Source: Pocillopora damicornis | Lineage: Eukaryota | DNA length: 64,000 bases | Assembly (NCBI RefSeq): GCF_003704095.1 | Contig: NW_020846824.1 | Span: 186,001-250,000, forward strand | Direction of reading: 5' to 3' | In this document: piece by piece, positions 14,635-58,340 of the stretch | Layout of the letters: each line of letters opens with the position of its first letter | Position numbering within the stretch: position 1 is the first letter of the stretch | The notes under the pieces: generated by a model | The model's input: the letters and a program-made list of their open reading frames with translations, nothing else | The model's database searches: none | Told to the model about the DNA's origin: nothing | Made by a program: the position numbers and the translations under genes

Positions 14635-17600
14635 ATGAAAGGACCGCTGTTTTTTTGCATCATTTTGTGCTTGTACTGGAGCCTATTTCCTGTGTCAACA
14701 GGTACACTAGTTCTCTTTATATATAATGTCTATTAACATACATTGTCGAACAAGACAACTCTCTATCTACCCCCAACTAGTGCTTCGGAGACGTCTGAAC
14801 TTCATACATGACCTGATCATGAAAGCGCTTGATTGTATCTTGAAACCACATGACGCAATTTCGAGTTGAATGTTTTTTTCAAGCGCAATTCATTTAAAAA
14901 TTTGAATCACTCTGCATTTGTTTGAACAACGATTTTCGACGTAAAAGGCTCTTTATTTGTCTCGTTGGAACTCCTTTTTGTGAGTATTCCCCCATTAACA
15001 AGAACTGATGCATATTTTTTTCGGAATTTAAAATTTTAAGTTGTTCGATCGAGCGTCAATTGCCAATATATATAGATGTCAACTAAAAACTTGCTTAAAA
15101 TTCTTATTCCCAATCGACAAAACGACACTTTTAACACTTTCTTTAAGTAAACGTGTTCATATTGATAGAAGGAAGAGTTGTTTGACTTTGGATGTGTGTG
15201 CAGTACGTTCAACGATCTAATTTAAGCCTTTTTATGGGCTCCATTCATCTGTTATTATAATTGCGAATGCCGTGTGGCAAGGCGTTTAATTTGTAAAAAA
15301 TCAGCATAAAGTGAAATGGGTGATATTCTCAGCTTCTTTTAGGGGACTAATTACTATTTTTCAGTCTAAAAAAAAACGGAATGTGTTCATTTTTCTAAAA
15401 ATCATTTTTCTAAATTGGTTCCCAAACCTTGTTCGATTAAATCCTTCAAAATACGCTTCTCTAAACATTTCTTGATTACCATCCTGACAGATTAACAGTC
15501 ATAATTATATTCATATGAAATGCTCACTGTTATTAATTATTCATGTAATGTGTATTCTGACAGGCTCCAAGGAAAGTTCTCAACAACGCCTGCTGGCACA
15601 TCTGTTCGCAAAGTATGATGGGGACGGCCGTCCAAGCTCCGACAGGTCACGCGCTGTTCTCGTGTCGTTTGGCGCGAAACTTGTCAGGATTATCCAGTTG
15701 GTAAGCACAAATCTTCGACTAAGACTTTTGATAGAAACAATATTGTTTTAATTTCAAGTAAGTGGCGTAAATCAAAAACGAGGTGATCATAATTAACTTC
15801 AAATCAGAATAAAAATAGTTTTCATTTGACTTCATAAAGGAGAAGTCAAAGTGCGAATGAGCTAGAAAAAACGTCAGCCACCCAGTCCTAATTGGTTTAC
15901 ATTTTTTCAGGATCTGATTGGTTGAGAGGACGGCGTGAGTTTTCTAGAGCAATTAGAAAGTGCGACAAAGTAATCTCAGACAAGCTTTAAAGTCTCAACT
16001 GAAAAAAACAAGAACGACAGCAATGTTTATTCGGTTACTTGGATGGGTGAATGGAGAGTTATTGTAAAGATAGTAATATATATGCCCAACATTGGACCAT
16101 AAATTGACCAGCTTTTTGTTTCAATTTGTTTCTGCACTATTTTATTATAGAATGAAAGAGGAAATACGATTCGTTCTCAATGGTGGATCTACCAGGTAAA
16201 AAATTATTACAATTAGAATTGCAAAATTCACTCATATATTTAGGAAGGTTATACGTGCACAGTTTTATAAAAATCTAATTTTGAAGAGAGATTTTTTACT
16301 TATGTTATTATATCCTAATACTTTATATTCTTGGGATTTGAGGTTTTGAATCGTAGTGAGCAGATCTGTTATCAAATCTATTACTGGTTTAAAATTCTAC
16401 TTCACTCTGTTTATACATTTATTTAATATATATATTTTAATTTGTACCCATGCCCCTCTCACAATTCTTATTCAGCAATGGATGAATTCTGACTTGACTT
16501 GGAACGAGGCTGACTATAATGGAACCAAGGTTATTCACGTGAGTCCCAGAAAGGTCTGGGCACCAGACATCATACTGTACAACAGGTGAGAGTATGAACC
16601 CCTTCCACCCTAATATCAGTATGCATATTCTCTATACTGCTCTTCATGCAGTTCTTAAGGCGCTGACAAGGAGAAATTGTTTAACAATCAAGAGCGTCTT
16701 AAGTTGGTGATCGTTTCTTTTTTTTCTGATGATTTTAATGCGCGATTCCGGGGAGTGGTATTAATATACTATTTACTCTTTAAGGTTTACAAGGCGGCTG
16801 ATAACTGCCAGTGCTTACAACCAATTTTCGTGACACTCAGTTTACTTAACAATTCAACATTTTTACTTCTCACTGCTGGGCTGGATTGTTCAAAGCTGGG
16901 TTAAGATAACCTAGGCTAAGTATGAAATCTGAATTAAGATCTGACAATTTAATTATTGGATGCTCTAAACAGAATAAAGAAAACTATCCTTAAAAGGCTT
17001 TTGAACAAAATAATAAAGAAGCCCGAATTTAAAATTTCACCTTGGGTTAGCGCTAATCGGCCTTTGAACAACTGGGCTCAGGATGGAAAGAGGCCATTTT
17101 GAGAGTAAAGTGTCTTGCCGGGAAATTTTCTCAGACTTTTTTCAACGCGTAATTAATATCATGTATGAGATAGATACAGCTTGGGTAGGCTAAGCTTACT
17201 TCTAACATTTGTGATCTCATTGATAAATCATTACTTTTAAAATGATATAAGGAAGCATTTTCAAGTGTTCACAGATTTATAATTTGCACGTAATTAATAG
17301 CAGGCCACAGTTTCTCATCCCACACAATCAACTTTTTAACCTCTCACATTAAAACCCTTTGTTAACAGATAGAAACAGGGAAAAAAAAAAGGGAGCAACA
17401 TGTAACGTCCCCATGCGATATCAGCACGGCTAGGGGCTCTGCCTCATGCACCACTTTTTTGTCATTATCACATTTTAACATCAGCATGAAATATTTTTGT
17501 TAAAATGATTAGAAGGGGAGTTATGTTGATGAGTTAATCTAAGTGTACTTGAAAATCCATACTCGTCAGGGCGTGGCCTGCTATTACTGTATTTATCATA

Positions 17601-19819
17601 ATTAACTTATCACAGTGTGCGGTTCGCTGACAGTGCTGACGATAACGACAAACTTGGTGGAGGAACAGAGAAGTATAAAACCAAGATAGCAATAAACTCC
17701 AACGGATCGTGCAAGTGGATGGCGCCAGCAATCTTTCAAAGCACGTGCGAAATCAATACGAAATACTTTCCTTTCGACGACCAGGTTGGTCATTTGAATT
17801 ATGGTCATAGAATTATTGGCAATTATGGCTCGTTGTACAAATGTGTGCTTAGTTGCCAAGCTTTTGAACGGAAGTGAGGCTGAGGATGACTGCCACCTTC
17901 AGTCTCACTCTGACTCACTGTAACATGTAATGGAAACGAGAAACCAGTAAGCTTTATCATAGTTGAGTGATTACTTGTAAAAAACCGGAAAAATATGCTT
18001 TGAAAGAACTCCTCTTCAAAAGCTTGACAACTACGCACCCGAGTTTAAGATAAACTGCTACCAAAATGATCAAAAGTAACAATGGACGTTTTAACTAAAA
18101 GCTGAGAAATCTCGATTTTGCTACATGGCTGAGGTCACGATTCGTTGTGTAGGTCTGTAAGTCAAAACAGATCTTAAAATCGCCTAATGTCCACTCTGTT
18201 TAAGATCTGCACGCTTAAGTTCGGATCCTGGGCTTTTGATGGCAGCGAGCTGGATGTTGCTGTTGACGAGTCTGAGACTGGTGCCAAGGGAGACATCTAT
18301 CGGAACAATACCGAGTGGGACTTGGTAAAAGTGACAGCGGTTAGAATCGAGGTAAGTGAAGAACAAGGGCGGTTAGAATCGATGGAATTTTTTATTTGCC
18401 AATCCTCTCAGATTAAACGACCCTCACCAGAAATTACAAAGATCTGGATGGATCGCATGGAAAGTTATGAAAATAACACAACGCTAAACGCACTGCAACT
18501 GTACTTTGCTGTTGTTGTTTTTTGTAACAGGACATATACAGCTGCTGTGTTCACCCATACCCAAGCATCATACTTTCGCTTCATCTAAGCAGGCGGTATT
18601 ACTTCTACATGGTGAATCTTGTGGTACCGTGTTCTCTTATAGCCCTCATGGTCCTTCTTTCCTTCATTTTGCCGCCGGAGTCTGGGGAGAGAATAGGACT
18701 GGGTATTACAGTACTTATGGCTATGGCTATCTTCCAGGAACTGACGTCAGCTAAGCTGCCAGCGGATTCCGAATACATTCCGTTGCTAGGTAATGTATTA
18801 TCGCTACTTTAAAAGACCAAGAGGGAACAGCTGATAGAAGGCGTCTGATTTTTGGTATTAGTATGTACGATACAGACACCAAATAAAAATACTTTATTTC
18901 GGTCAATATGCCTAAATATACCAATACCTAATATACCTAGTCCTGACGTGCAGTTTTGTCTCTTTGACCGCTCGGAGGTGAGTAGTACTTGCTAATTACC
19001 TCCAAACCAGCCAGTCGGCACGCGCCAAAAGCACTTTTCACCCGTATAGTATAGTACATACTAGTGATGATGATGATGACACCAGGTTCCTCGGATCTGA
19101 GGAACAGTGGGAAGGTCGTCCTTGTTGACACGCCCACTTAATGCTTGGTACATAATACTTTGAACAATACCAACAAACACATCTTTAATACCGTAAATTT
19201 TTCTGTTTACTTTTCAGCTAAGTACTACTCCAGTGCTATTTTTGAGATTGGTTTGGCTCTGTTTGCCACTTGTGTCATTTTGAACTTTTTCTACCAACGC
19301 TGCGAAATGCCTGGTTGGCTCAAACAGCTCATGTTCAGTTTTCTGGGTCCATTGGTGAGAATAAAGTATACACCTCAACCGTCAAACAAAACTCGTAAGA
19401 AAAACCAAAAAGGTTTGATCGAAGAAAACTTTGAGTTAGCTTCGCAGTCCGAAGGCTCTTACTCGGGGCCCATTGAGTTAAGAAAAATGAATGTGTTAAA
19501 CGATAGTGCATGTGAAGGAAATGGGCGCTGTGGTGAAGCAAAGCCTTCGTCGCCTGTTCATCTCATACGTTCTAGAACACGCAGCAGTATTCGTGAGACT
19601 CCTATTCTGAATGATCAAGTGACAGAAAAACAACAAGGAAAGTATGTGTTCGAGGCGGCTGATGGGTCCCGCGCGGATGAAATAAACAATATTACTGACT
19701 GGCAAATGGCCGCAAAAATTTTGGATCGTGTTGTGCTCGTCCTTGGGATTTTAATCAGCGTTGCAACTTTCCTCGCAATTTTCATGCAAGCACCAAGAGT
19801 ACAAGAGATGTTTTCCTGA
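14635..19819 (+). CDS. Nicotinic acetylcholine receptor-like (Cys-loop, cation-type) alpha-like subunit 1, 505 aa
   Basis: Exons 14635-14701, 15564-15700, 16151-16195, 16476-16585, 17634-17784, 18205-18351, 18531-18789, 19218-19819 (1518 nt, phases consistent). Signal peptide MKGPLFFCIILCLYWSLFPVST; loop A VWAPDIILYN; Cys-loop CEINTKYFPFDDQIC; loop B FGSWAFD; loop C YSCCVHPY; M1-M2 PPESGERIGLGITVLM; M4 AAKILDRVVL. Confidence 0.95.
15868..15985 (-). repeat. Family C repeat fragment in intron 2 of subunit 1
   Basis: CTGATTGGTTGAGAGGACGGCGTGAGTTTTCT matches the reverse complement of the family core. Confidence 0.5.
16595..16795. mobile_element. piggyBac-type MITE, family B (related to the reverse complement of family A), in intron 4 of subunit 1
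   Basis: Shares CACCCT..TGCATATT..AGGAGAA.TTGTTTAACAATCA..GTTGGTGATC with 20774-20986 and more weakly with 38192-38376. Confidence 0.7.
16876..17081. mobile_element. Non-autonomous DNA element (MITE) with CTGGGC..TTGTTCRAAG terminal inverted repeats
   Basis: CTGGGCTGGATTGTTCAAAG ... CTTTGAACAACTGGGCTCAG; an inverted copy lies at 56457-56699. Confidence 0.7.
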
Positions 19820-23900: not shown

Positions 23901-26900
23901 GCACCAGTCACAAATAACTCAAATACACTCGAAATGAGCGCAATTTTCCTCTGATTACAGTGAGGTGAAAACAAAAGTTGGAAGATACCGGTTTGAATTA
24001 AATTTGTTTCTTGGTTTTCACAGCATGAGATTTTAAACAAAAAGCAGAAAGGAATTGTGAGGAAAATTTGATTGCGGTGGGCACAGGAGGAATTCGTTAA
24101 TAAGTAGTTCGTGATCGGCGTGAAACCTTCAAAATGTTAGACTACTTACTGGGAACAGTTAGATTCAACTTGATCAGAAATCAATTATTCTTTTAAGCTC
24201 AAATTTAACAATCAAGTAATAATCTCCTCATCTGGGCTTTTCAATTCAACACGTTTAATTTTTAAAATGAGGTTTTGAAAATAGATTTGCATACCTAACG
24301 ACCGTCAAATTTAAAAGAAGACTTTTTCAAGAAAGCGGTGTGTAAGGGAAACAATTATTACATCATAAAAGTATTTAATACGCACTGTAATGCAACTTAA
24401 AAAAGGCTTAATTCATGACTGACCAAAAGAATTAAGAATAGCTAAGACCTCTTCCAATAAATATTACTAATTAAACGTTGAGTTTGGATCCTCCAATATT
24501 ATAGTGCTGTTATTTTTCTGTTCGCTACAGGACACCACGGTGACTCGCTGGTTATTTATGGTTTTCACAACAATTTCTGTACACCTACGTATCACGGCGC
24601 GGCATGTGGTTTGGCCATTATAACGAAAAATAAAAGTGGCTATAGCTGCTTCACGTTTCCTTCGTTAAATTTTCATTTTTTCGTGCATTCATCTTTTCAT
24701 TTATTCAATCATTTGTTTCATGCATTCGTTCGTTTATTGGCGCCAGTTCGTTAGGACTTAAAATCACTGTTTCTTGTTGAGAGTCCTTATATTCCGTGAG
24801 TTGCTATGGATGTTATGCAAATCATTTAAAAGGGTTCAGCTGTAGAATTATCAAATACATGTACATGACCTCCCCAACATCCAAAGAATCAGCAATAAAG
24901 GTACGGTGTGTTTTACGTGACGCACGAAACAGAAAATATTACATTTATCGTGAGAATTTATCGTCAAGGTGGTTTCAAACTTAAGAGGCCGTGAGTGCCA
25001 TCGTTGAGAGATTCATGCCGTTGGTGTACTTAGCTAAGTGGCGAGCGAAAAATCTTCCAGTGGGGGTACAGCTTTCCTACTGTATGGACGTTTTACTAGA
25101 AATTTTAAATATTTCCAAGGAAACATGATATGGCATTCCTCGCTTATTAATAATTGAATTATCCAATCACGTAAAGGAGTAGAGGCACCATTGTGCCGCA
25201 AATGTCCACTACTGCATCGCAGCTGTGTTTGCTATCGGGTCATAGTACTAATTCACAGTGAAAAGCAGAAACAAATTGGGTTCGTAGGCTAGAGTTTTAC
25301 ATCTGGACTCGTTTTCGATCCCTAACTGATCGCGGTAGTTGTTTCACGGGTGAGTTGATCCAAGTTTTCTTTTTTAATGTATATAAAATGGGCCTTTAAC
25401 TGATTCTTCCGCAGCTCAGGTAATTCGATGCTTCCTATACTTAGCTGGATAGACTTTTAAAATATAATGGCTTTTTAGAATCTGTTTCCGATACGAATGC
25501 AAAAACACTGGCTTGATTTTACAGCATAATTTTGTAAAGTATACAATGAATTATTTTCAGTCTAAACTAATTTCGAAAGCTACCTTCGGTAACCAAATCG
25601 GCGTCAGTCGAGGTTATGTATTAAAGGTTCGGTACGATTAATTGCACGAAAACAATACGTCACCAGAGATTATTCTTTTTGTGCAAGTAAATATTATATC
25701 ATGTTATTTGTGTTTGTGGTTTTTGGTTATTGTTCGGCGTTTCAAAGCAAGATAGCACCGTTCATTCAGTCGGTTTATCTTAAAGCTTCATTCTTTTTTT
25801 CTCCTTCAATAATTTGAATTTAAGTGATTTCCGATAATACAAGTTTTATGAAAATAACTTTGATTCGCCAACAAGAGCACTGAATGAAAAGATGGCTATG
25901 AGCCATTTTTTCTTTTATTCGTTCGACGACGCACAAAGAAAATTGTTGGACGTGGAATCAGCTTAGGGTAGTTGATGATATTTTCATCAAGCTATGCCCT
26001 TTGCCACAGGAATCAGAAAAGGGTTCTTTTGGTGATTTCCTTTNNNNNNNNNNTTATGGCATGTCGAAAGAAGAATCTCATTTCAGAGACATTTGTGTTC
26101 CAACATGGAGAGCCAAGACTGTCGAATTAACAATTTCCATGAATTTCTTTGAAGTAGCATCATTGTCACAATTCAAGCAAGGTACATTTATCACAAATTC
26201 TGACCTCTACAAGCCATTACTTCATTTTTCTGTCCACATATCCTGTAATTTCACTAATTGTAATAACTCTGAGGTCTGCTCAAGACTTGGGACTGACAAG
26301 TGCCCAATCAATACTTCAGTTAAGACGACACCATCTGTCAAAGCGTCACAAAAAAGAAAATTCATTCATTCACCGCATTAACAGTACTTTTAATTAAATT
26401 TATGTGAAAACAAGTAATGAAGCTTTCCTAAATCTTTTTTTTTTTGTTCATATACAGCAGTTTATTACGGCTGTCTGCTGTTGAATCTGTGGACAGTACT
26501 TGTAAACCACAATCTCTCAAAAAGGTAGGGCGATCGAATGGTCTTTTTTGTATTACTCTACTTTTTGGACAAGTTTGGGCTGAAGGCATCAAAAATTCCC
26601 TCAAAATAATTCAAGCGGGTTCGTAGTTATAGGAAGTGGTAGCAAGCCAGCAAATGAAAGCTGAAACACAGGCCGTACAGACAATTCCCTTCGTGTAACG
26701 TGGATACATAAATTGTATCCCAGTTTACTTTTTAGAGCTGCACACACAACGCCGTCTGTGGCCTGTTTGTCGCCTTGATCGAGTGTCAGACAGGCCTCCA
26801 GTTGCTCTCTGCGGCGAAAAGAATGGTCAGTGAGGCATCGCTTTCCTTTCCGTTTTTCTTTAAAGACGCCTAATTGAACATTCCTTCAGCTTTAAATTTT

Positions 26901-29639: not shown

Positions 29640-29737
29640 TACGTCGGCCTTCCTGTAGAAAGCGTGTCGGAAGTTTCGTTCGAGAAGTAAGTGTGGTTAA
29701 CAGTGCGACAATCGTTCGCAAAAAGTACGGCACAAAG
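29640..29737 (+). other. Candidate non-coding leader exon of subunit 2
   Basis: CpG-rich stretch ending in the donor AAG|GTAATG at 29737/29738; it matches the unexplained acceptor at 31266. The 5' limit is a guess. Confidence 0.35.
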
Positions 29738-31319
29738 GTAATGTTCAAATCTTTATTCTAAACTTCAACGGCCATATCATAACGATACATTTACATTTAC
29801 TCTTATATGATTAGTAAACACAATGTTGTGGGATTTCTCAAATGTAAAAAAAGTAGAAGAAAAAATTTCATGCGTAAAGATGCCGCCATGTCTGCCAACT
29901 TTATTAGTATTTTTCAAGAAATGATGTTTAAGTTTTACAACTTGATGCTTCACTTGCTGTCTTCAAATTAACATTTGTGCACAGTTAAAATAGAACTTTT
30001 TCACAAGACAACTGTTAAGTTGAAATGAAAGATTCCGCTCACAGCTGAGTATTGATTCAAGCTGGCTCGTACGTGTGGATCAATTCCGTGAGTTTAAAAT
30101 GCTGACTTTCACGATTTTAAATTGTCACGTTTTTATGTTGTTTAGATTACAAATCATTTTGAATGAGATAATTATGTGGAATGGAAATATTTTATTTCAG
30201 GATTTTCTTTTAATGGGTCAAAAGACTTCGAACAAATGAAATACACAACAAGTTGGAAATTTAGGAAAAAAACAGATAGAGTAAAGCTATTACGACAAAG
30301 TCCGATGTTGTTCCCGTAAAATAAATTTGTCATCAATCGCTTAAGAGTAAAAATTCTAATCATCTGTCACATTAACAAATCAACGCACGTCTTTAGGATA
30401 TTGCCGAATATCGTTTGTAGCGCACTTCTACAAAATGGAAAAAAAAAAAAGAAAAAAATAGCGTTAAATGCATTTACTTTTTCAAATTATTTTGACTTCC
30501 TCGCAAAAAAATTGGGGCGGACCGAGCTTTAAATTTCATCGACGCCTTGAAGTCTACATCATTGTTATTCAAGCCCTAAGGCACTCGGTTTCATATCTAT
30601 GGATGAGATGCACACCTTGAATTTTACCAGATCGGTAGATTGAAGATTTCTGCGGTATGATCTAAAATTTTCACGTAATATGACTTGCGTAATTCAAAAT
30701 ATTAATCAGAAAGAAATCAAGGTAATGTCATTTTTCCGATCTTTGTTTTCATCATTAAAAACCAAATCAAGAACAAAAAGTGAAAACTCTTCAAGCGTGC
30801 AGACAGATCTTAATTTTGTGTTTGTACCAAGAGTCCGAAGTTCATAGTGTGTTCTTTCATTATCTTGGCATGTTGTTACCTTAATATAATATCGTAATTA
30901 TAGTCATGATGTATACCTGTACGGTATAACTGATCATTCTGATAAGAGATAATTTACGGTGAAAAAGCATTTTTAATCATGTTTACAGAGATAACAGAGA
31001 GACTGGAAAGGAAGCTAAGGGTTAAAAGCCTGGGAGAAGGTCTCCTTGAAGTTAAGGAAAATATGTAACAATTGTGCTCCGGCAAAAACGAATTAATAAT
31101 TATCTGAGGAACACTGAATCTGCGCGTCTGAAGAGCAGTCTCGAAAGCTTTTATATAAAAGGATCGGTAACATTTTTTTCTTCATCATTAACAGGCTTGT
31201 GGATCGATTACAAAATTTTTAGGTGGTAGTTGTCAGAAGATATAAAAGTGTCTTTGTCTCTTGCAGATATATAGTCCAGAGCGAGCTCGTCGAAATCTTG
31301 GCCAAACCGCACTGGAATA

Positions 31320-36559: not shown

Positions 36560-36744
36560 AAAAGAGGCACCAGTAAGAAGTGTGTGAGAACAAACCCAGC
36601 ATATATGACAATGCATATTCTCTCTACTTTTCGGTGCAATAACGTGGGGATATTGTGAGGAAAGGACAACAACGTTCGATCCTGGAGAAAAAAAACAAAA
36701 GGCTTCCCTGAATTTCGGCTTTGTGTGTGAGCGGCAACAAAAAG

Positions 36745-36960
36745 TACGATGGCCCACCTCTGTCACGGCAAAAGAAATAACCTCGCGGCAAAAGAGAAAG
36801 ACTCGCGACAAAAGGAGGAACCTCACCGCAGAAAGGAAAAGACTCACGGCAAAAGAAAAAACCTCACGGCCAAGACTCACCACCGTGAGTCTTTTCCTTT
36901 TGCCGTGGGGTTTTTTCCGCGAGGTTACTTCTTTTGCCGTGACAGTTGTGAGCCACCGTA
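36745..36960. mobile_element. Foldback MITE with ~45-bp inverted arms, internal ~20-bp subrepeats and TA ends
   Basis: TACGATGGCCCACCTCTGTCACGGCAAAAGAAATAACCTCGCGG versus reverse complement of the right end TACGGTGGCTCACAACTGTCACGGCAAAAGAAGTAACCTCGCGG; repeated CTCACGGCAAAAG-like units. Confidence 0.8.
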
Positions 36961-44139: not shown

Positions 44140-44300
44140 CAGAGTTGCTGGCTAAGTGGCAGGCAATCGAGAAAGCAGAGGAAGTCAAGCTCGGATAAAA
44201 ATCCATTTGTTGCCTTTCTGTTTGGGGAATGAAACGTGGAGACTGTTAAAGCAGTCTGAATCCAAGGAGTTTTATGTTCGATACAGAAAACCCGGCAAAG
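44140..44300 (+). other. Candidate non-coding leader exon of subunit 3
   Basis: CpG-richer promoter-like stretch at about 43950-44130, then the donor AAG|GTGAAT at 44300/44301; it matches the unexplained acceptor TTCTTACAG ending at 49138. The 5' limit is a guess. Confidence 0.3.
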
Positions 44301-47300: not shown

Positions 47301-49166
47301 GATGGAGCAACAAAATGTGCGTGAGGGAGCCTCACTGTAACATTCTCCTAATTTCGTTATTTAAAACCAATCCTTGAGTTCCTGCTATACGACGTTGAAG
47401 TGTTACAACGTGAAATCAAAAGATAAAATATTGTACACTTAATTTGTCATATACACGTTTAGTTGAGGGCTTTCGTGTGACTGATACACGAAATGTTGTT
47501 TAAATTTCAACTGCATTTATCGTTCAATCGTACCAGAAATTAAAGAGTGAGGAACAAAGCAAATGTTTTATATCTATGCTGCTCTTTACCAGGTTGTGCT
47601 GAAGGATACACTCAACTCTCTAAGGAATGTAAAACATGATGGCGATTCGCTTGTAGGGGGACTCAATTATCATCTTCATATAGCAGTCTTCGAATTAACC
47701 TCAAGCGACCTTTCTATGTTACAAAACTTATACAAGGATCGAGCATTTTCGCTTGGAAAATCTATATTTGCCACTTTCATATGATTCTATCCTGGACTAA
47801 GACCTTATCTGGATTTTTTTTCGCCAAAAAACAAGTGATCAAGTCGAGGAAGAAAAATTTCTAAGTAAATTAGGAATACCCATCTCAGTGATTTACCGCT
47901 AAAACGAAAAAAAGTAGACAGTTATTTGTTGCTCCCACTGCTTTGAGAAATTCAGAAATACTGGTAATTAGCAAGGACATCGCTCATCTATTTTCAGACC
48001 CTATTGGGTATCGCGAATGACATATTTGTGCTATAACTTCATGTCTAAAACAAAGAACATATCGTTTAAACTTAATAACTTTCATTACATTCGCCTTTTA
48101 GGAAAAGAGAGATATTTTAGAACACTTAAACAAAAGGACTATTTAATAATAGTGAAATATTGCCTTTTGAGTCGTTGCTGTTTTGTTTCAAAAAGATCTC
48201 CACCGGTGTATCAAAACACAGAGTTTATCGAGAACAATTCCTCAGTTGCCGAGAGGCAAAATCTATTTTCATGATATGCCTCACGTTTGATAAACTTACA
48301 GGTCAATAGTCAAGCAATTTTCGAAAACTAAAACACTTATTATGCATGTTCACTTATTTCACTTCGTATGCAAGAAAGGTTTCTCAAACATGACCACCAC
48401 GAAAGATTTATTCACAAGCAAAATAAGAATATATTTATCTTTAAAATCCAAATTAATCATGTTATTGTTGAAACAAAGGCTATCTAGTGCACTCACCCTT
48501 TGGGCCTTTTCAACAAGTAAACTATATTTAATATTTGAATTTCAAGCCTTTTGTTTTTCGGTTGGATCGCGTAAAATGATATGTGAAAAGAGTAACTTAG
48601 TTGTGAAAGAATAACTACCTATTTCAAAGCTGACGTCTTTAAATTCTAAAACCAACGGGAACAAAATGAAACAAAGTACTTCAGCTCGAGAATATTTTAC
48701 CATTTTTTTACGGCAGGAAACATCTCTTGCTACCTTCAAAGAGGCGGTAACTACACACGCTAGATACTACATCAAACAAATCCGAAAGGAAAACGCCAAG
48801 TATTAAATGTTAAGTTAGCAACCTGTTCTGAACGTTGTTTACTAGGGACAATGATTTTACGATCACCAGATCGTGTCAATGTTTATGGTTTTCAAATACA
48901 CTGGATAATAAGCGCTATAAACTCATTGTTATGCTGGATAATTCATGGAAGACCTCAGAACATGATTCCATATTCATTTAATCTTTCCTTAGACGACTGA
49001 CGTCAGAGAAATATATCAGAAATTAACTCATGACCGATAAGGCGTCACATGGTTTATTCGCGGGTTGAGTACAGGTTCTAGCTTGACTTCAAGAGAGCGC
49101 TTAGAAGTTTTCTAAGCTTGCCTTCTTTTTTCTTACAGTTTCTCGACATTGAGTTACTTTCCAAAG

Positions 49167-52100
49167 ATGTCGCCGCTCATATTTACGTTCTGTGTTTTGA
49201 GCACCTGTGCGTTGTGCTCAATCCTTGCCTTCGCTGAGATGGATGAATCTGCGCAAGGTATGAAACTTTCTAGTTTACTTGAAAATTTCGCTCCCGCAAA
49301 AATCGATTCAAATGTTTGCTTGAAAGAATGGAAATCGTAGAAAGTTATTTTGAAATATTTGAGTAGATTTCATCGTGTTTGCTGAAAATTCGGATGTATT
49401 AAAATGATCTGCGTCTATTAAATACGGTAAGAGGAATTACAGTTTGAATTTTATTCCACATTAGAAAGGCCGCGTCTTGTGTGCCATCGTGAAATTTGCT
49501 CGAATTGTCTCGGTATTTCTCAATGTAGTTATTCACTGTTACGGCGGCTTTCAAAGAACTTCATTAGGCCATTTTTATTCTATTAACAATTTCTGTTCTT
49601 GTGCCGAAAAATAATTGAATTTCGCAATGAAATGTTTGAGCGTCGCCTGAAGGAAGAATTTAACCTTTTCATTTTAATATTACTGATATGATGACCCCCT
49701 GGTATTCGGAGGTTTTTGATTTTTAAAACATATACACTACGAGACAGAAATAAACATCGAGTGAAGGTTTTTCTTCAATTTTTAATGATGCGAAAACGTG
49801 TTCAAAGTTGCTAAGATTGGAACGTCCAGGGCTGAATGTTATTGATCAGCTTTTTTCCCAGCAAGTCGAAATTTATAAATAGCCACAGTATGGAATCAAA
49901 ACATTTTCCGTTTTGCGTTTTAAGAGATTCGAAATGTTAAAGAAAAGGGAGATTGTGATTAAAATAAAAAAACGTCCAGTGGTGTTAGTGAAAAATCAAT
50001 TCTTTCATTCCTTTGTTTCGAGAGTTAATTTCACTGAAAGTCGCACCATCCTCGCAATTTCTTTTCTTTTTCATTATCATTCAAAATTTTAAATTGGCAT
50101 ATGCCATGTTCAACATTGTGTTCCTCTCAAATCAAAGCATGTTCTTGCTTCTTAAATAATCTGTGTACGCGTTAGTTACACGTGCATTTTATGTGTGTTA
50201 ATGTTTTCATGTAGAAATCTTCAAGAGAGTAGATATCACTTTCATTTTGCAAATGAAACAAATTCCATATCGGACTTCTCCCTTGGTGGTTTAGGAATAT
50301 AACCAATTTGCACGAGTGGCAGAAAGAAACAATTAATTTAATAACGTGTCTTCTTTGGTTGGCTCTCCTTAGAGTCTTTAATCCTGATTTTCCGTCTAGG
50401 ACTCTTGGGTGGTAATTTTTATGAATATAAAACTTCAAGTAAATTTTGTGTTGAAATGCATTCGAAAATTCGTAAATAGATTTCGAAATACACATGTGCA
50501 TTTTTTGAAAATCCAACTGTTCGCCGGTTAGATCCAAAAATGTGCCAGTATGCTATGTATTGTTAAGTCTTATTTCGAAATAAACTTTATAATTCTAAAT
50601 GACAGGCTTTGGAATTTAAATAAATTTGATTAATTATAGGCAAGATAATGAATAATAAAGAGAGAATTCGAGAGAGCTCTCGTTTTGTGTTGTGTATTTT
50701 GAAGAAAGCTATAACGACTTTTAACGATGAATTTCAAACATTGTTCTCTCACCGAACGAATTTTGTAAATTAAAACGGAATTGTTCATTGCAGTAAAATT
50801 TTTCACTTAAAATTGTGCGTTCATCTACAACGGAGCTTGAAAAGCCGTTCACAGCCTGGATACCCCAATAGAAAGCTAAAGAACGTATGACGTGTTACCA
50901 ACTGAGCGTTTGATTTTTTTATAGATAGAAGAACCATAAGTGCTTTTTGCTGAATTCTTTATCCACATGCTAATTACAAACGCTCAAATGCAACCTACTA
51001 TGAAGCTGTTTTCAGGTGGAAACGTAGTTTTCATAATTGATGGCCTTAGATACAAGCTGGTGCTAATTTCGTTTCATAATCATCCCTGTGACCCTAGTTA
51101 CGTATTGACACTTTCGATGTTCACCAGGCGCAAGTTTGTTTTACCAATTGGAAATCTTTTTTCAATCCCGAAAGCTAAGTTTCTTGAACTAACCTTAAAA
51201 TGATTATATTGACATGAGTGTCTGCCGAAGTTTCGAGGAAATTCCCTAATCATGAAAGTTAAATTTAACAAGAAGGCAAGAACGACATCGGTGTTAAGTA
51301 ATATGCTGTCATGAAAGCGGGATAACAAGCCATAAATGAGAAACCTGCGTATTTTGCATTAATAGAGATAATATTAGCTTTTTTATAGCCGGGGTTTTCT
51401 TTAACTTGTTTGATGTAAAAGCCGGCCGCCAATTGACGTGCAAAGCTGTCAACTAACGTTAAAAAGCTAACGAGCAAGAAAATGCAAAACGATGTGTTTA
51501 TGATGCACCAATCCACCAAAACGTCTTTAGGCAAATAAAACATCATGTATTTTGTAAGGAAATTTCAACACTGCTATAAACTCAAGATAACAACATTTGA
51601 AATTCATCTAAAAATTCTTATAAGATTTCCCAGGGCCAAAATCCGGGTTCAACAAAGTTTACTTGTGTTTTTTTTCTTTTTTTTTTTTAAACATGTGATT
51701 TATGGTTTGTTTATTTTGCTTTGTCATTTTTCCGTGTTTTATTGTTCATTTCCTTCACGGCGAAGTGACATCTTAATTCATCTCCCGTTGAGACCATAAC
51801 CCAGATATCTTATCAAATTTACACGAAATCTTTGAAATCACCGTCAACATGGCGTCCGCATTAAGCATCATGCGATACCAAGGTTAATGTCGGAAGCAAG
51901 CTATTAGATTGTTTAGTCTTTCTGTAAACTTTACGTCAGACAATCTGAAATGTACTGGAATACCTGCTGGCTAAATTGAATTTCAGTTATAGCAGATCAC
52001 GCATTGCGTCGTGTGATGAAGACAAGTTTCAACCAGTGCTGAGTTTGATTAGCAGGTTATCTCCAAAAATTTCATTGTATCCTATGTTCTATTAAGGACT

Positions 52101-55100
52101 TTTAATGTCTCTTTATAAGAACTGACCTAAAAAATCACTAGTTTTAAGAATTGTTGAGGTAACTAATTAAACAGCGAGATGAAAATGCATTTTCAAATCA
52201 TATGTTTAAAGGGGAGATAGTGTTTTATGTTTAACATAATAACACATCAGGCTTTTATCAGGGGTCTCCATTGTAATATTAATGGTTTTGTTTGATCGTC
52301 AGTCTGAAAAGAGAAACGTTCACTGCATTTTACTTTTTTGGCGTAACAGTCAAAGGTTTGGCGAAGACGGCTTATGGGTGGCAATGCAAAAGTGCTTATT
52401 TTATAATACGTCTTTAAATCAAAGATCCTTAAAGAAAGAGGTACCACTTTCTCGATTATTGAGATAGGTTCATGCGTAGAATTAATATCCGTATTTCTGC
52501 TTTTCTCTTCATAAATATGCCGCCAGCGAATTTTGATTACTTAAAGATCATTATCGGCTGATATTTAATCGAATCATTCAAAAAGGGATGGTTAATAAAA
52601 ATTACTTTATTTTACGAGTTTTGTGGCGTTGCACTGACTTTTATTTTTTCATACTTTGAGTCCTAAAATAAAACGTTACGATAATTTAGTATGTATAAAA
52701 GAATGTAAAACTTAGTTTATTTCCAATCTCAGATTTACGGTGTCTATTTTTTCTGATCTAGAATCTGTTATTTGTGTCTTTGTCAGGTCAAAAGTTATTG
52801 CTTTAAAATTTACCCTCCTTTCCAAAGCCCAATGTATTTACCCCAGATTAGCTCTGCCATTTTTAACTTAAAAATACTATTTTTGAGCTTTCATTAACTC
52901 TTATTTTAACAAATTTTTTTCTTTAACCACTAACCTCTAATTACTTTTATCCTCTGAATATTTTATAAAAATAAATGAAGAGCCCTTCTTTTGCTTAGTT
53001 CTATGGAGAATGTTTTGCGATTGAGTGAGATATTGGAAGATACAATGGTAACGATTGATTGAAAACTGAAAAGCGAGCCTCATCTGTGGTTTTAAACTTT
53101 AATTAAAACCACAATTTGGGGTAAGACGCGATGTAAAAGGAGCGGATTGGAGATTCATTGTTTTGGCGAAAAGCTTTACGAAACAGCAACACAATTTAAT
53201 CCTTCTTTTACAAGTGAAAATTTAGGTGTCTCCTCCATTTCATTCCACTCGATGTTGCTTTAGGAACTTTCATTTCTAGAGAATATTTTTTGGCAATTTT
53301 TGTCACACGCGACAAACACTTGACACATGGTGTTTTGTATATGTAAGACTAAAATCTGTTCGGCAAGTCGCCGTGAACGACATATACATAGAACACTTTG
53401 GCCTATTTTAAAACTAGGCTTCAACTCGCCAATTTGTACAATCACTGATAAATTGTAAAAATTTTGCACGGTTTTTGAAAGGCACATGAAAGGCGAACAA
53501 AGATCGTCCCTTGCACATGTTGGAACAAACGCCTTTGGTTCAAGAGAGGTAGATTATCTAACGCAAGAAGTGCTCTTAGTAACATTTGTCTTAGACACAG
53601 CTTTTCGACCGGTTTTTCGAGTAATTTAGACCAAGCTACTGTCAAAACATCTGTGAAAATGAGGAAATGTCCTCGTTCTCAATCGAAGCTAGGTTTGGCC
53701 ACTAAGTCTAACGTGTGCAACATGCGCTGTAGGTGTATTAAAGCTTAAAGCTCTTTTCGATTGGGTGTCGTAAAACCAAAACCAAAGTAATCATTGACGA
53801 AAACCAATTAGATGAAAGGAAAATACCTTTAAAAGCCAACGAGAACTCTAAGTAAAAACAACCAAACTGCCCAAAGCGCGGGAAAACGCTGGCCACCAAG
53901 TCGTTTTGTGATTAAATTGTGTTTTGCAGCTGATTGGTCAAGAAAGTGGAGCGACGGTTCTCTAGACCAATCACAAAAAAGGGTAAAAAAAAATCAAAGC
54001 AATCCCAGATTACTTTATTTTCAATTGAAAATTGTCCCAAAATTTCACATATTAAAGACATTTCACGTATGTTGAAAAAAAACAATGCATGAATTATCTT
54101 TTTTATTTTTTTTGGTAGAACACCATGGTAACCTTACTCAAGAACAAAGATTGTTAGATCATCTGCTTCAGAACTACAGGACCCGCAGACTTATCCGTCC
54201 TGTAAAGGATCTCTCCAAACCAATTGTCATCGATTTCAGTGCTGAGTTAGTTGGCGTAGCTAAAGTGGTAAGAAAAATGTACAAATTTAAAAAGGAGCTT
54301 GGAAAAAATATTACTCCTTCGGATGCGAATGCGTAAAATTAGGCTGAGCTCAAATCCGAGCCATGTGTTATGCTGGTCAGCGAATCTCGGTTTACAATTC
54401 AAAATGTTTCCGAAATGAAATTATGTTGCTATGGTAACGTATTTAGACACAAGGATGGTCACGATGCTTAGCCCGGCACTAATTTGATGAATATCTTGAA
54501 TTATGCAGGACGAAAAAGAGCAGATAATTAAGACTCACTTTTGGATTCGCCTGGTAAGTCTGTCCCTTCCTTGCTTGATATTTGCCCAGCATGAACAAAT
54601 AATAATTATGAATATTATAGTAAGTTTTTTGTGCTCTAGTAATGTACTCTTGCAGTTTTGTGGTATTGTGATTATATAATTTTGTACAACAAGAAAATTA
54701 TAAAAAAATTATTTATAAATATGACTCATTGAGGCAAAACCTGTTCAAATAAACTGTAATTAAACGATCAGACTTGCTGGTGCTTCTGTTGTCGTTTACT
54801 GTTGATTTTTTTATCGAGTGACAGCTTTGGACGATTGTTCTTGATAAGTTATCGACTAACCATTCATCGCTGAATTGTCTAACTAATGTAGTGCGGGGAT
54901 GCCCTGCTATTCGGTAACGCCATGTTCAAGTCATTTTTTTTTTTTAAGAATAACGCTAAGCTTTTCTTCGCAGGACTGGAACAATCCTTATATGACGTGG
55001 AAACCCCAGGATTACGGAGGAAACAAGGTGATGAACATTCCTCCCGAAATGCTTTGGGTGCCTGACATCGTTTTGTACAACAAGTAAGCCTCGCTTTGAT

Positions 55101-58100
55101 GACGTCTTGAATGAGATACTGTATTTGTGCCTCGATGAATTATGGGGGTAAACTGTGGTGCTGCGTCGGTGAGAGGGTACAGCAAGGTAATTTGGTTTTA
55201 CCAACTCGGTTGAAAACTGGAAGTGGCCACCATAAAGGGTTTCTTTCGCCGAGAGAAGGGTTAACCCTCGGAACGTTAGCTTTATAGCTTTTAACATGAG
55301 GTGGTCAATTTACGTAATCAAATGAGTTGATAAAACCAAATTACCTTGTATTTGAACTCGTCTGTCTGGCGTCAATTTCGGTCTGTCTGTGTGTATGGTG
55401 TCTTTAATTTGTACTTTTCCGTCTAATGTATCGGTCTGTCGGTAGCCTGAGCTGTTTTTTTTATTTACCTTCGACCAGTCTGTGTTGATGTCAGTCATCC
55501 TTTATCTATCTGTTTGTCGGTTTGCAGCACGCATTAATGTCTTTCCGTCTTTCTTTCTTCTTCATCTTAACTATCTGTCTCTCTTTCTATCAGTCCACCG
55601 GTCATTCTGGATTTCATTGGGTCACCTGCCATTCAGAGTTTCTTCTTAAGAAACTACAAACACATTCATAACCACTAGCCTGGGACAACCTGTGTGTAAA
55701 CACAGTGTGAAGAGACATCTCTGAAATTACTATGGCTTGCTTTGAAAAAAAACTTAATTCTACGGAAGCCTTTGGATTAGCTCTCATGAACCATCTTGTT
55801 ATGTGTTTGAATATTGAAATATATCATATCTACACACGGCTTGCAGTGTTGCAACAAGTACCGGTAAAACTCGATAATTGACAGTTATTTCTCAGATCTC
55901 CTTTCAATTCAAACTTTTCTTTCCTAGGGATTCCTCTTCTGATTTTCAGCTTCCATCCTTAAAAAGGTAAAAATAGCAAGTAATCCCTCTAAATCGACAA
56001 TTCTGACCAGTTAAACGATTTTTATCCCTCTTCTCAGCGCTGATGATCGACTCAGCTTAAAAGCAACATCCGGGTTCACAACGAGCGTCAAGGTCCGCCA
56101 TGATGGAAACCAAACATGGCGGGCTCACATCATCTACAAGAGCATGTGCAACATCAACGTCAAGTATTTTCCATTTGATGAGCAGCAGTGTAAAATGGTT
56201 TTCGCCTCTTGGTCACATGATGTGAACACAATAGACTTGAGAAAAAGGAAAGGTCTGCCAGGAGAAAAAGCTGTGGCTAAAAAAGATAGAGGATCCGACG
56301 TGTTCCAGGAAAACGAGGAATGGACGGTGGAATGGATTACCATCGATAGGCACGAGGTTCGTTAAAACTGATAAATTATAACTTCCTTGCCAATTTTATG
56401 ATACATTATAAAATACTTCAAAAGGTAGGAGGAGTTTAAAAAAATTTGACCGGAATCTGGGCCCCGTTGTTCGAAGGACGATTAGCATTAACCCAGGGTT
56501 AAATTTTTAATCCGGGTTTCTTCTTTCCTTTGTTCAAAAACTTTTTGAGTGATTTTCTCTATTCTTTTAAGATCATCCAATAATCAAGTTCTAAAAAATA
56601 CGAAATATACTGAGTTTTCTTGTAAAGTTTTCAGATCTGTGACTAGATTTCACACTTACCCTGGATTATCTTAACTCAGCTTTGAACAACCAGGCCCGAT
56701 TTATGTGATGTCATTCGCAACAATCAAGACATATAGAGATAAATCAGAAATTTTCATTTTTTTTTCAAATTCCTATCAATAACTTGATTTTGGAGGGAAA
56801 AGTTTGGTAATGTTCCCACTACCAACCTTGTTCATGAAATATCTCTGATAAAAAATAAACACCACACAGTCACCAAACGTAACTCTATCAAGTCTTTGAA
56901 AACTGATATAGTTTAAGAACAAAATTATGATATCTAGGTTGGGAGAGAAACTTTCATCGTTTGTGGTACCGGTGATTGCAATAACATTTTAAATCTAAAT
57001 TTGTTGTGAACTGCGAGAAACGTACATGCCTAAACATTTTGTCAAGCTACAGCAGTAGCTTGACAAAACACCGTAAGCTTTCTCTCCATCTTGGTATCAA
57101 GCTCTTACAGAATTCTTTGCTTAATCAAGTGTGAAACTGTTTCACTTGATTTCTGAGGCGACCCATAGTAAGGTCAAGTTATTCTTCTTTCGACAGAAAG
57201 AAAACGACTGCTGCGATTTACCCGTCGCCGATTTGACCGTCACCATGCTACTGCGCAGACGCACCTACTATTACGTAATGAGCCTTATCTTGCCCTGTAC
57301 TCTCATAGCTTGCACCATCTTCCTAGAGTTTATTCTTCCAGCAGAGTCTGGAGAACGAGTGGGCCTTGGTATTACTATCCTTTTATCGATGGCCGTGTTC
57401 CAAGAACTGACCTCTGAGAAGCTTCCCTCAAGCTCTGAACACTTCCCTCTGTTAGGTGAGTGCAAGGGACCAGGAGCCGTATGTTAAGTGACAAGGGAAT
57501 AAAATATTCTCTTGCATACGATAATATAACAAAAGGGAATGTTCCTAAATGCCAGTAAAACATTAGTTCTGGCTCCCCCCCCCTTCAAAGATACGCTTTG
57601 TTAAGAAAAAGTTGTAAATAATAATAATAATAGACAACCGTGCATGTCCCTAAATACAGGTAAGGACCCCTTCTGTAGTAAATCTCGCCTACGCTTCTGT
57701 TAATACCTGTTTGATTTGCCTTTATCTAGCTATGTACTACTCAGTGTCCATCATGGAGATAGGTACAGCACTCGGCGCTACCTGCATCATTCTAAATTTT
57801 CACCACCGAAGCACAAAGATGCCGAGTTGGTTCCAAAAGATCGTGCTTGAATGGCTGGCCAAGATCGTGCGATATGAGCCCACGTACAACCGGCATCCGG
57901 CTAGCGGTGACGCTTTAAATGACAGCACGCAAAAGATAATGCAATCAAACACAACTAGTGACAGGAAAAGAAACGACGCTTTTGATTTGGAAAGAGAATC
58001 AATCGAGTATGAAATGGACCTTTTCGAGGAGGCTCGCGTGGGACGTGACCAAGTGCCTTTGGCCCAAAATGGGAACATTTCAACGAATCACGTCACCAGG

Positions 58101-58340
58101 AAGCGCTCGGTCAAACGCAAACCGCAGGACTCTGAAACCGAGACTACGGAGGTACAGATATCGGAGGCGAAGTTTCCTTTGTATGACTTCAACAAGGAAG
58201 AATTTTACAAAAAGCAATGGCAGGATGCGGCCAGGATCTTAGATCGAGTTTTGCTGTTAGCGTCGGTTGTGATTGGGTCTGTTTCAGCAATGAGTATTTT
58301 CTTGCAATCTCCTCGGATCAGAGAACTGTTTATTCCGTGA
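49167..58340 (+). CDS. Nicotinic acetylcholine receptor-like subunit 3 (vicinal CC kept, loop C tyrosines lost), 527 aa
   Basis: Exons 49167-49257, 54119-54267, 54509-54553, 54974-55083, 56038-56356, 57197-57455, 57730-58340 (1584 nt, phases consistent). Signal peptide MSPLIFTFCVLSTCALCSILAFA; motifs LWVPDIVLYN, CNINVKYFPFDEQQC, FASWSHD, ENDCCDLPV, PAESGERVGLGITILL, AARILDRV. AATAAA at 58715-58720. Confidence 0.95.
53750..54038 (-). repeat. Family C repeat in intron 1 of subunit 3
   Basis: GGGTGT..AAAACCAAAACCAAAGT..AAGCGCGGGAAAACG..GACCAATCAC matches the reverse complement of 5543-5777. Confidence 0.65.
55150..55350. mobile_element. Foldback/palindromic interspersed element in intron 4 of subunit 3
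   Basis: Arms 55183-55207 and 55324-55348 are 24/25 complementary (CAAGGTAATTTGGTTTTAYCAACTC); inner TGGCCACC/GGTGGTCA; related copy at 1528-1683. Confidence 0.7.
56457..56699. mobile_element. MITE of the same family as 16876-17081, opposite orientation
   Basis: CTGGGCCCCGTTGTTCGAAG ... CTTTGAACAACCAGGCCC; the interior is the reverse complement of the 16876 copy. Confidence 0.7.

What the first reader, a model, noticed from the sequence alone, without database searches (positions are those of the whole stretch)
14635..58340. Tandem triad of divergent nicotinic-type subunits that may form one heteromeric receptor for a non-acetylcholine (zwitterionic onium?) ligand
Seen: three apparently intact head-to-tail paralogs share an unusual pore signature (FQELTS) but have complementary binding faces. 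Subunits 1 and 2 keep Y93, W149, Y190, CC and Y198; subunit 3 has lost the principal face and has a basic complementary face. Established: clustered subunits can co-assemble (vertebrate CHRNA5/A3/B4), and nicotinic-family channels have been repurposed for choline and betaine (C. elegans DEG-3/DES-2, ACR-23) and for chemosensation (cephalopod chemotactile receptors). Inference: a 1(+) or 2(+)/3(-) interface pairs an aromatic cation cage with arginines able to hold a carboxylate. That geometry suits glycine betaine, other betaines or DMSP, which are abundant in symbiotic corals. This is a hypothesis, not a demonstrated function.
Basis: partly seen in the sequence, partly recalled or inferred. 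Interest (0 to 1): 0.82.

Follow-up and report, generated by a model that had tools for sequence, protein, structure and literature searches.

The report
Ancient three-gene nicotinic receptor cluster
Three neighbouring coral genes encode different subunits of a nicotinic-type ion channel, and the same trio sits in the same order in a sea anemone, so it probably builds one mixed receptor; what opens that receptor is unknown.

Summary
The window carries three complete, head-to-tail, GT-AG spliced Cys-loop subunit genes: G1 (505 aa), G2 (520 aa) and G3 (527 aa), 37-46% identical to each other. All three have FQELTS at TM2 positions 14'-19'. Intronless RNA contigs match every exon junction of each gene. 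The 267-N gap lies in G2 intron 5. It hides only the acceptor site and two exon letters, and mRNA contigs cross it in frame. G1 and G2 keep the full aromatic box. G3 keeps Y93, W149 and, in corals, the CC pair. It has lost Y190, Y198 and K145, and carries R57, K109 and R119 on its complementary face.

New here: the three genes are three old orthogroups, each with a sea-anemone ortholog. Nematostella has the same G1, G2, G3 order and orientation. FQELTS/FQELSS marks a cnidarian clade that includes hydrozoans. Glu at 16' and Met at 9' are rare outside it.

Best reading: one heteromeric cation channel, with G1 and G2 binding agonist and G3 acting as an accessory subunit, like alpha5 or beta1. The betaine/DMSP idea is untested. 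It is weakened because the trio predates coral symbiosis, ACR-23 binds betaine without arginines, and basic residues on the alpha10 complementary face are thought to impair binding.

The parts
14635..19819 (+). G1, an alpha-type subunit of 505 aa in 8 coding exons: 14635-14701, 15564-15700, 16151-16195, 16476-16585, 17634-17784, 18205-18351, 18531-18789, 19218-19819. Loop C reads IYSCCVHPY. TM2 has Met at 9' and FQELTS.
   Evidence: Gene model; all introns are GT-AG. The intronless RNA contig L011 (ERR9592157) matches all 8 exons at 96-100% identity and runs on to 20017 as 3' UTR. The model is 98.6% identical to transcript protein P0309.
31320..36559 (+). G2, an alpha-type subunit of 520 aa in 7 coding exons: 31320-31380, 32352-32491, 32976-33020, 33443-33552, 33929-34226, (35147)-35405, 35910-36559. 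Loop C reads KYTCCPHPY. TM2 has Met at 9', Cys at 4' and FQELTS. One codon is left as X at the edge of the gap.
   Evidence: Gene model. RNA contigs X1 record 1 (1913 nt) and X2 record 7 (2157 nt) show every junction. A further 5' UTR exon lies upstream of 31265 (loose ends). The model is 94% identical to transcript protein P0205.
34882..35148 (.). Assembly gap inside G2 intron 5. It hides the splice acceptor and the first two letters of exon 6.
   Evidence: In one search, table 5, the joint into 35149 is seen in 4 runs with no letters in between (table 5c). Orthologs have exactly one residue at that place. The gap was not filled.
44142..60501 (+). G3, an accessory-like subunit of 527 aa. 5' UTR exon 44142-44300. 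Coding exons 49167-49257, 54119-54267, 54509-54553, 54974-55083, 56038-56356, 57197-57455, 57730-58340. The 3' UTR reaches at least 60501. Loop C reads ENDCCDLPV. R57, K109 and R119 are present. TM2 has Leu at 9' and FQELTS.
   Evidence: Gene model. RNA contigs L012, L013 and L017 match all exons at 98-100%. The model is 99.4% identical to P. verrucosa XP_066017961.1 (P0151), and the first-exon peptide is identical to it.
26044..26053 (.). Ten-letter assembly gap in the G1-G2 intergenic region; it touches no exon.
   Evidence: No Cys-loop match lies there.

Best explanation
This is a conserved three-gene tandem array of a cnidarian-specific branch of the nicotinic (cation-selective Cys-loop) receptor family. 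G1 and G2 are alpha-type subunits with a complete aromatic box on both faces. G3 is a non-binding or accessory-type subunit: its loop C tyrosines and K145 are lost, and its complementary face is basic.

The most likely mechanism is that the three products assemble into one heteropentameric cation channel. Agonist sites would lie at G1/G2 interfaces and G3 would fill the structural position, as alpha5 or beta3 do in neuronal receptors and beta1 does in muscle receptors. The ligand is most simply a quaternary or primary amine of the acetylcholine/choline type.

The shared pore (Glu at -1', an added Glu at 16', Glu at 20' in G2 and G3, Met at 9' in G1 and G2) predicts a strongly cation-selective channel with unusual gating or divalent-ion handling.

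Shown: gene structure, expression, orthology, synteny and residue states. Inferred: co-assembly, the role of G3, the ligand class and the pore behaviour.
For: Gene integrity and expression:
- All three genes are intact and spliced, and are found as poly(A) RNA contigs. G1 and G3 contigs come from the same ERR9592xxx accession series.

Orthology and synteny:
- In the tree, the G1, G2 and G3 orthogroups (SH-aLRT 100, 98, 100) each hold Nematostella, one or two other anemones (G1, G3) and scleractinians. G1+G2 has support 96 and the whole FQEL clade 99.
- Nematostella OW051994.1 carries G1-type, G2-type and G3-type genes in that order, all on one strand within 25 kb.
- In Orbicella, G2 and G3 lie 24.5 kb apart on one contig.

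Residues:
- G3's TM2 is 100% identical from Nematostella to Pocillopora. V198, V145, R/K57 and R119 are found in all G3 orthologs. The CC pair is replaced by WS in anemones.
- G3 is the most conserved of the three against Nematostella: 54.6%, compared with 51.2% for G1 and 44.1% for G2.
- Full-length G3 matches alpha7 best among solved structures. Its ligand-binding-domain exon matches muscle beta1 best.
- Basic residues on a complementary face are described as impairing ACh binding in mammalian alpha10 (PMC8634148).

Gene structure:
- Intron positions and phases are identical in the three genes, with exon sizes 45, 110 and 259 in each.
Against: - Co-assembly was not tested. Expression in the same RNA samples is whole-colony evidence, not evidence from single cells.
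- G1 and G2 each have both faces complete and could form alpha7-like homomers.
- G3's loop C is invariant across scleractinians, so its principal face is under constraint and may do more than fill a position.
- Conserved gene order could reflect shared regulation or slow rearrangement with no co-assembly.
- Hydrozoan members of the clade lack the CC pair and W55. The clade as a whole is therefore not tied to a canonical ACh site.
Confidence: 0.55

Rival explanations
1. A G1(+)/G3(-) or G2(+)/G3(-) interface is the real agonist site. It pairs the aromatic cage with the G3 arginines and so recognises a zwitterion or an amine with an anionic tail, such as glycine betaine, other betaines, DMSP, taurine, GABA or another amino acid.
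For: G3 carries R57, K109 and R119 at the pocket positions equivalent to alpha7 Q57, L109 and L119. R/K57 and R119 are conserved in all G3 orthologs, including the anemones. Three cationic side chains would repel a plain cation such as ACh (inference). From general knowledge, position 57 corresponds to the loop D arginine that holds the carboxylate in GABA-A and glycine receptors. Nicotinic-family channels gated by betaine exist (ACR-23, PMC11377560).
Against:
- ACR-23 binds betaine with no arginine.
- The alpha9-like and alpha10 sequences aligned here also have R57.
- Basic loop E residues in alpha10 are described as a defect of the complementary face.
- K109 is found in corals only.
- The features and the cluster are present in Nematostella, so they do not track symbiosis.
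Confidence: 0.12
2. The subunits work independently. G1 and G2 each form homomeric, alpha7-like ACh-gated channels, or pair with subunits encoded elsewhere. G3 joins other partners. The tandem order survives only through shared enhancers or slow rearrangement.
For: G1 and G2 keep W55 and Y93, W149, Y190, CC and Y198, so either could supply both faces of a site. Their loop C to TM2 exon matches alpha7, a homomer, best among solved structures. The genome holds well over a hundred Cys-loop exon matches on many contigs, so other partners are available.
Against: The order and orientation of all three genes are kept between a stony coral and a sea anemone, with no other gene called between them in Nematostella. 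The three share a rare pore sequence that is held fixed within each orthogroup, as expected if the M2 helices line one pore together. G3 cannot make a canonical site alone.
Confidence: 0.28
3. G3, or G2 because of the gap, is a decaying or broken copy.
For: None, apart from G3's lost tyrosines and the gap in G2.
Against: All reading frames are open and all splice sites are canonical. Full-length spliced poly(A) transcripts exist. G3 has the highest conservation of the three, and its TM2 is identical across Hexacorallia. G2 mRNA crosses the gap in frame.
Confidence: 0.01

Closest known systems
Vertebrate CHRNA5-CHRNA3-CHRNB4 gene cluster (alpha3beta4alpha5 receptors)
   Same: Three clustered nicotinic subunit genes: binding subunits plus one accessory subunit. 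From general knowledge, alpha5 keeps the CC pair but lacks a key loop C tyrosine, as coral G3 does. The cluster is conserved over long times.
   Different: The two clusters are not orthologous: the cnidarian trio sits in a cnidarian-only clade. All three genes are head-to-tail here. The pore has Glu at 16' and Met at 9'. Co-assembly is not shown for the cnidarian genes.
Human alpha7 nAChR (best solved match, e.g. 8c9x, 7koo)
   Same: Gapless alignment through loop C, TM1 and TM2. G1 and G2 have Y188, C190, C191 and Y195 in alpha7 numbering, W149, Y93 and W55. Glu is at -1'. From memory, human CHRNA7 exons 2-4 are also 140, 45 and 110 bp.
   Different: TM2 14'-19' is FQELTS where alpha7 has FMLLVA. 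Position 9' is Met in G1 and G2. G3 lacks Y188 and Y195 and has R57, K109 and R119 where alpha7 has Q57, L109 and L119.
C. elegans ACR-23 (betaine-gated) and DEG-3/DES-2 (choline-sensitive; subunits co-encoded)
   Same: Nicotinic-family cation channels that use a non-ACh onium ligand. From general knowledge, deg-3 and des-2 are neighbouring genes whose products co-assemble.
   Different: These are weaker matches than alpha7 or beta1. ACR-23 binds betaine with the usual aromatic box, a cysteine thiol and water, and no arginines. There is no orthology.
Mammalian alpha10 and muscle beta1 (subunits with a poor or unused binding face)
   Same: Both have a basic or otherwise unfit complementary face; alpha10 R117 is described as weakening ACh binding. 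beta1 is the best solved match to G3's ligand-binding-domain exon and has a loop F insertion of similar length.
   Different: G3 has lost both faces at once and belongs to a different, cnidarian clade.
Nematostella NvnAChR-alpha A-Z set (Faltine-Gonzalez and Layden 2019, PMC6825365)
   Same: The same family and the same independent cnidarian radiation. The Nematostella orthologs of G1-G3 are presumably among those 26 genes.
   Different: The parts of that paper I read do not mention this cluster, the three orthogroups or the TM2 motif. I could not map its JGI gene ids to the trio, and the motif was not found in its held supplements.

Membership tests
Cys-loop (pentameric) ligand-gated ion channel | Neur_chan_LBD and Neur_chan_memb domains, a Cys-loop with 13 residues between the two cysteines, and four TM segments | tested here: met
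   Exon-wise Pfam matches to PF02931 and PF02932 for all three genes. The C-x13-C Cys-loop with FPFD is visible in the models. There is a full-length alignment to alpha7.
Nicotinic (cation-selective) branch | Glu at -1' with no Pro-Ala-Arg anion motif, and closer to nAChRs than to GABA-A, Gly or 5-HT3 receptors | tested here: met
   TM2 begins SGER or CGER in all three. The best solved matches are nAChR alpha7, alpha3, alpha4 and beta subunits, with 5-HT3A far below. Ion selectivity itself was not measured.
Alpha-type nAChR subunit | Vicinal cysteines in loop C at the positions equivalent to Torpedo 192-193 | tested here: met
   The CC pair is present in G1, G2 and G3 of the window. In G3 orthologs of sea anemones the pair is replaced by WS, so the feature is not conserved for G3.
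ACh-competent principal face | Y93, W149, Y190 and Y198 (Torpedo numbering) | tested here: met
   Met for G1 and G2. Not met for G3, which has N at 190, V at 198 and also V at 145.
ACh-competent complementary face | W55 plus uncharged residues at 57, 109, 117 and 119 | tested here: inconclusive
   G1 has W55, Y57, A109, K117 and M119. G2 has W55, K57, S109, S117 and M119. G3 has W55, R57, K109, T117 and R119. What charge is tolerated depends on the ligand.
Clustered co-assembling subunits (CHRNA5/A3/B4 type) | Tandem genes whose linkage is conserved | tested here: met
   Order and strand are the same in the window and in Nematostella. G2 and G3 are adjacent in Orbicella.
Clustered co-assembling subunits (CHRNA5/A3/B4 type) | Expression in the same cells and physical co-assembly | not testable with these tools
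   The only evidence is detection in samples: G2 in four RNA runs from three studies, and G1 and G3 in contigs of the ERR9592xxx accession series.
Betaine- or choline-gated nicotinic-family channels (ACR-23, DEG-3/DES-2) | Orthology to those nematode receptors | tested here: not met
   The trio lies in a cnidarian-only clade. ACR-23 and DEG-3/DES-2 are weaker solved matches than alpha7 or beta1.
Betaine- or choline-gated nicotinic-family channels (ACR-23, DEG-3/DES-2) | Activation by betaine or choline | not testable with these tools
   This needs electrophysiology.

The most novel reading that the evidence does not exclude
The conserved trio encodes an obligate heteromeric cation channel. Its agonist site is the alpha-type(+)/G3(-) interface, where an aromatic cage faces conserved R57 and R119. 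The natural agonist would then be a zwitterion or an amine with an anionic tail (a betaine, DMSP, taurine, GABA or another amino acid), not acetylcholine. That would make it an excitatory, nicotinic-family amino-acid or osmolyte receptor dating back to the ancestor of Hexacorallia.
Probability: 0.12. Interest if true: 0.8.

Novelty: new variant of a known kind. Interest (0 to 1): 0.55.

Why it matters
No cnidarian nicotinic-type receptor has a defined subunit composition or a ligand shown by heterologous expression in the literature I could search. This trio gives a concrete, small and conserved candidate set: two binding-type subunits and one accessory-type subunit. Orthologs exist in the laboratory model Nematostella, so the composition question can be tested directly.

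The clade-wide pore sequence (Glu at 16', Met at 9') is rare. Among 138 distinct TM2 sequences of relatives outside the clade, none has Met at 9' and two have Glu at 16'. It bears on gating and permeation in pentameric channels generally.

If G3's basic face turns out to be a real ligand site, that would show a route by which nicotinic-family channels acquire non-cholinergic agonists.

Tried and rejected
Searches with joined models
Searches used single exons by reference, or protein ids that the tools returned. Joined models were used only in local scripts for alignment, BLAST against fetched proteins and the tree.
- The word-based protein search cannot see full-length relatives from a single exon. 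I therefore used the representative search once, with an alignment of the three loop C-TM2 exons.

Look-ups that gave nothing
- P0012, P0167, P0008 and P0199 were not on record as exact gene products.
- The Hydra member has no Cys-loop neighbour within 10 kb, so a cluster outside Anthozoa is not shown.
- The strand of the Orbicella G2 and G3 genes relative to each other could not be read from the loci.
- FQELTS occurs in no paper of the library and not in the held supplements of the Nematostella nAChR paper. The trio could therefore not be mapped to the NvnAChR-alpha names or to their in situ patterns.

First-exon candidates for G3
- A start at the in-frame ATG at 54086 was rejected. The RefSeq ortholog and the RNA contigs use the exon at 49167-49257.
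- The 503-aa calls in RNA contigs reflect the gene caller choosing an internal start. They are not a frameshift: the upstream ATG is 72 letters before it, in frame.

Other rejected leads
- The extra Cys-loop gene after Orbicella G3 is a copy of the last three G3 exons with identical match scores. It is not a fourth subunit.

Not run
- Complex prediction was not sent.
G1 and G3 expression therefore rests on RNA contigs fetched by protein look-up.
Full report
**What is in the window**

The window is contig C3459, 186001-250000, of a 234-Mb assembly in 4393 contigs. Pfam searches of the whole assembly place ligand-binding-domain and membrane-domain matches on this contig at only three places, all on the + strand.

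From stop-to-stop frames and splice sites I built three models. All their introns are GT-AG.

| Gene | Coding span | Coding exons | Length |
|---|---|---|---|
| G1 | 14635-19819 | 8 | 505 aa |
| G2 | 31320-36559 | 7 | 520 aa |
| G3 | 49167-58340 | 7 | 527 aa |

Intron positions and phases are the same in the three genes; each has exons of 45, 110 and 259 bp. G1 has one extra intron, which splits the Cys-loop exon. The proteins are 46% (G1-G2), 37% (G1-G3) and 40% (G2-G3) identical.

The genome is a Pocillopora or a very close relative. G3 is 99.4% identical to P. verrucosa XP_066017961.1, which NCBI names 'neuronal acetylcholine receptor subunit alpha-10 isoform X2'.

**The gaps, tested first**

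- The 10-letter gap at 26044-26053 is intergenic.
- The 267-letter gap at 34882-35148 lies between G2 exon 5, which ends at 34226, and the readable part of exon 6, which starts at 35149.
- By comparison with G1 and G3, exon 6 should start four residues before the CC pair. The gap would then hide only the acceptor site and two exon letters.
- I laid RNA contigs from four runs of three studies on 31250-36650. Contigs of 1913 and 2157 letters carry every G2 junction as modelled. They pass from exon 5 directly into 35149 with no letters in between, which keeps the frame.
- Orthologs have exactly one residue at that place.
- I left the codon as X and do not state the hidden letters.

**Expression**

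- G2 is present as spliced RNA in poly(A) libraries.
- G1 is matched over all eight exons by an intronless 1764-letter contig from ERR9592157.
- G3 is matched over all exons by 3.7-3.9-kb contigs from six runs of the same accession series. These contigs add a 5' UTR exon at 44142-44300 and a 3' UTR reaching at least 60501.
- This is evidence at the level of whole samples, not of cells.

**Residues**

A gapless alignment of the loop C-TM1-TM2 exon to human alpha7 and a full-length alignment of the G3 ortholog to alpha7 fix the numbering.

| Feature | G1 | G2 | G3 |
|---|---|---|---|
| Y93 (loop A) | kept | kept | kept |
| W149 (loop B) | kept | kept | kept |
| W55 (loop D) | kept | kept | kept |
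| CC pair (loop C) | kept | kept | kept in corals |
| Y190, Y198 | both kept | both kept | N, V |
| K145 | K | K | V |
| Position 57 | Y | K | R |
| Position 109 | A | S | K |
| Position 117 | K | S | T |
| Position 119 | M | M | R |

G3 also has R at 111 and a Lys/Arg-rich insertion in loop F.

Only 'lost the principal face' is too strong for G3.

In TM2, FQELTS occupies 14'-19'. Glu therefore sits at 16', one turn above 13'. Position -1' is Glu. Position 20' is Glu in G2 and G3 and Ala in G1. Position 9' is Met in G1 and G2 and Leu in G3.

**How unusual is the pore?**

- In this genome the back-translated motif meets Cys-loop hits only at these three genes.
- A profile of the three exons, searched against 1.84 billion representative proteins, gave 32 hits at E of 1e-30 or better. 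Among the best 150 there were 19 TM2 segments with FQELTS and 7 with FQELSS.
- Named members come from Pocillopora, Oculina, Nematostella and Hydra. A sister group with FQQLTS includes Montipora.
- The motif is in no paper of the library.
- The signature is therefore real and rare, but it marks a cnidarian clade and is not peculiar to this trio.

**Orthology and synteny**

Full-length relatives were reached through protein ids returned by the tools. A maximum-likelihood tree of 54 proteins (quick search, SH-aLRT support only) gives:

- one clade (support 99) made of a hydrozoan group, the G3 orthogroup (100), and G1 (100) joined with G2 (98) at support 96;
- in each orthogroup, Nematostella and several stony corals, plus further sea anemones in G1 and G3.

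The two duplications therefore predate the split of sea anemones and stony corals. From general knowledge that split is of early Palaeozoic or greater age.

In Nematostella record OW051994.1, a 25-kb locus holds three Cys-loop genes on one strand.

- The first matches G1 best and has G1's TM2.
- The second is the G2 ortholog.
- The third starts with the exact N-terminus of the G3 ortholog P0200.

The order and orientation equal those in the window, and no other gene is called between them. In Orbicella, G2 and G3 lie 24.5 kb apart on one contig. The Hydra member stands alone within 10 kb.

**Conservation within orthogroups**

- G3's TM2 is identical from Nematostella to Pocillopora.
- V198, V145, R or K at 57 and R119 are found in every G3 ortholog.
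- Scleractinian G3 has an invariant loop C with CC. Anemone G3 has WS in place of CC.
- G1 and G2 keep the aromatic box throughout, and Met at 9' throughout.
- Against Nematostella, G3 is the most conserved: 54.6%, compared with 51.2% for G1 and 44.1% for G2.
- Hydrozoan members lack CC and have His for W55.

**Interpretation**

G3 has been held under strong constraint for a very long time, yet it cannot make a canonical agonist site on either face. It shares a rare, fixed M2 sequence with two neighbours that can make such sites. The simplest account is one heteropentamer in which G1 and G2 bind agonist and G3 is an accessory subunit.

Three parallels support this:
- the vertebrate CHRNA5/A3/B4 cluster (general knowledge);
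- muscle beta1, the best solved match to G3's ligand-binding-domain exon;
- mammalian alpha10, whose basic loop E residue is described as weakening its complementary face (PMC8634148).

I put this reading at about 0.55.

I rate it at about 0.12, for three reasons:
- ACR-23 binds betaine without arginines (PMC11377560);
- R57 also occurs in the alpha9-like and alpha10 sequences aligned here;
- the cluster and the basic face exist in Nematostella, so they do not track coral symbiosis.

Independent homomers, with linkage kept for regulatory reasons, get about 0.28. Decay of any copy is excluded.

**Novelty**

The genes are already predicted and named as nicotinic subunits in RefSeq for close relatives, so the family assignment is not new. 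In the literature I could search, I found no description of:
- the three-orthogroup structure;
- its conserved tandem order across Hexacorallia;
- the clade-wide Glu 16' / Met 9' pore;
- the accessory-like nature of G3.

I class the finding as a new variant of a known kind.

**Limits**

- There is no cell-level expression, no assembly test and no ligand test.
- The tree used a quick search.
- The strand relation in Orbicella is unknown.
- Joined models were not sent to any search tool.

Noticed in passing
window 1776-2270 (+): An open frame of 165 aa matches the SET domain (PF00856, E 8e-10). It is probably an exon of an unrelated methyltransferase gene upstream of the cluster.
   Followed up: partly
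window 17784/18205: G1 has an extra intron that splits the Cys-loop exon between FPFDDQ and the second Cys-loop cysteine. G2 and G3 lack this intron, and the same stretch is one open frame in the Nematostella G1 ortholog (L007:2955-3350).
   Followed up: partly
window 32517-32697 and 33603-33783: Short stretches inside G2 introns have RNA contig depth far above the exons in all four runs, and the contigs run on into unrelated sequence. They are probably pieces of a transcribed repeat or mobile element.
   Followed up: no
L009:19992-22196 (Orbicella MZGG01000382.1): The last three exons of the Orbicella G3 ortholog are repeated about 3.3 kb downstream with identical match scores and are called as a separate 435-aa gene. 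This is either a partial tandem duplication or an assembly artefact.
   Followed up: partly
P0035, P0325, P0330 (Hydra, Clytia, Hydractinia): Hydrozoan members of the FQEL clade keep the TM2 (FQELSS). They have no vicinal cysteines, His in place of W55 and an altered loop A. Their ligand site has diverged strongly while the pore has stayed fixed.
   Followed up: partly
G000 contigs C2895, C4013, C666, C203, C469, C2721, C2801: The genome has at least 154 ligand-binding-domain and 113 membrane-domain exon matches. Many lie in tight groups, and some have open frames of 380-470 aa, which suggests intron-poor genes. Tandem Cys-loop clusters therefore look common in this coral.
   Followed up: no
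window 36554-36991 (-) and 36723-37028 (+): Overlapping open frames on both strands just after G2 contain repeated short peptide units and have no Pfam match. This is probably a tandem repeat in or just after the G2 3' UTR.
   Followed up: no
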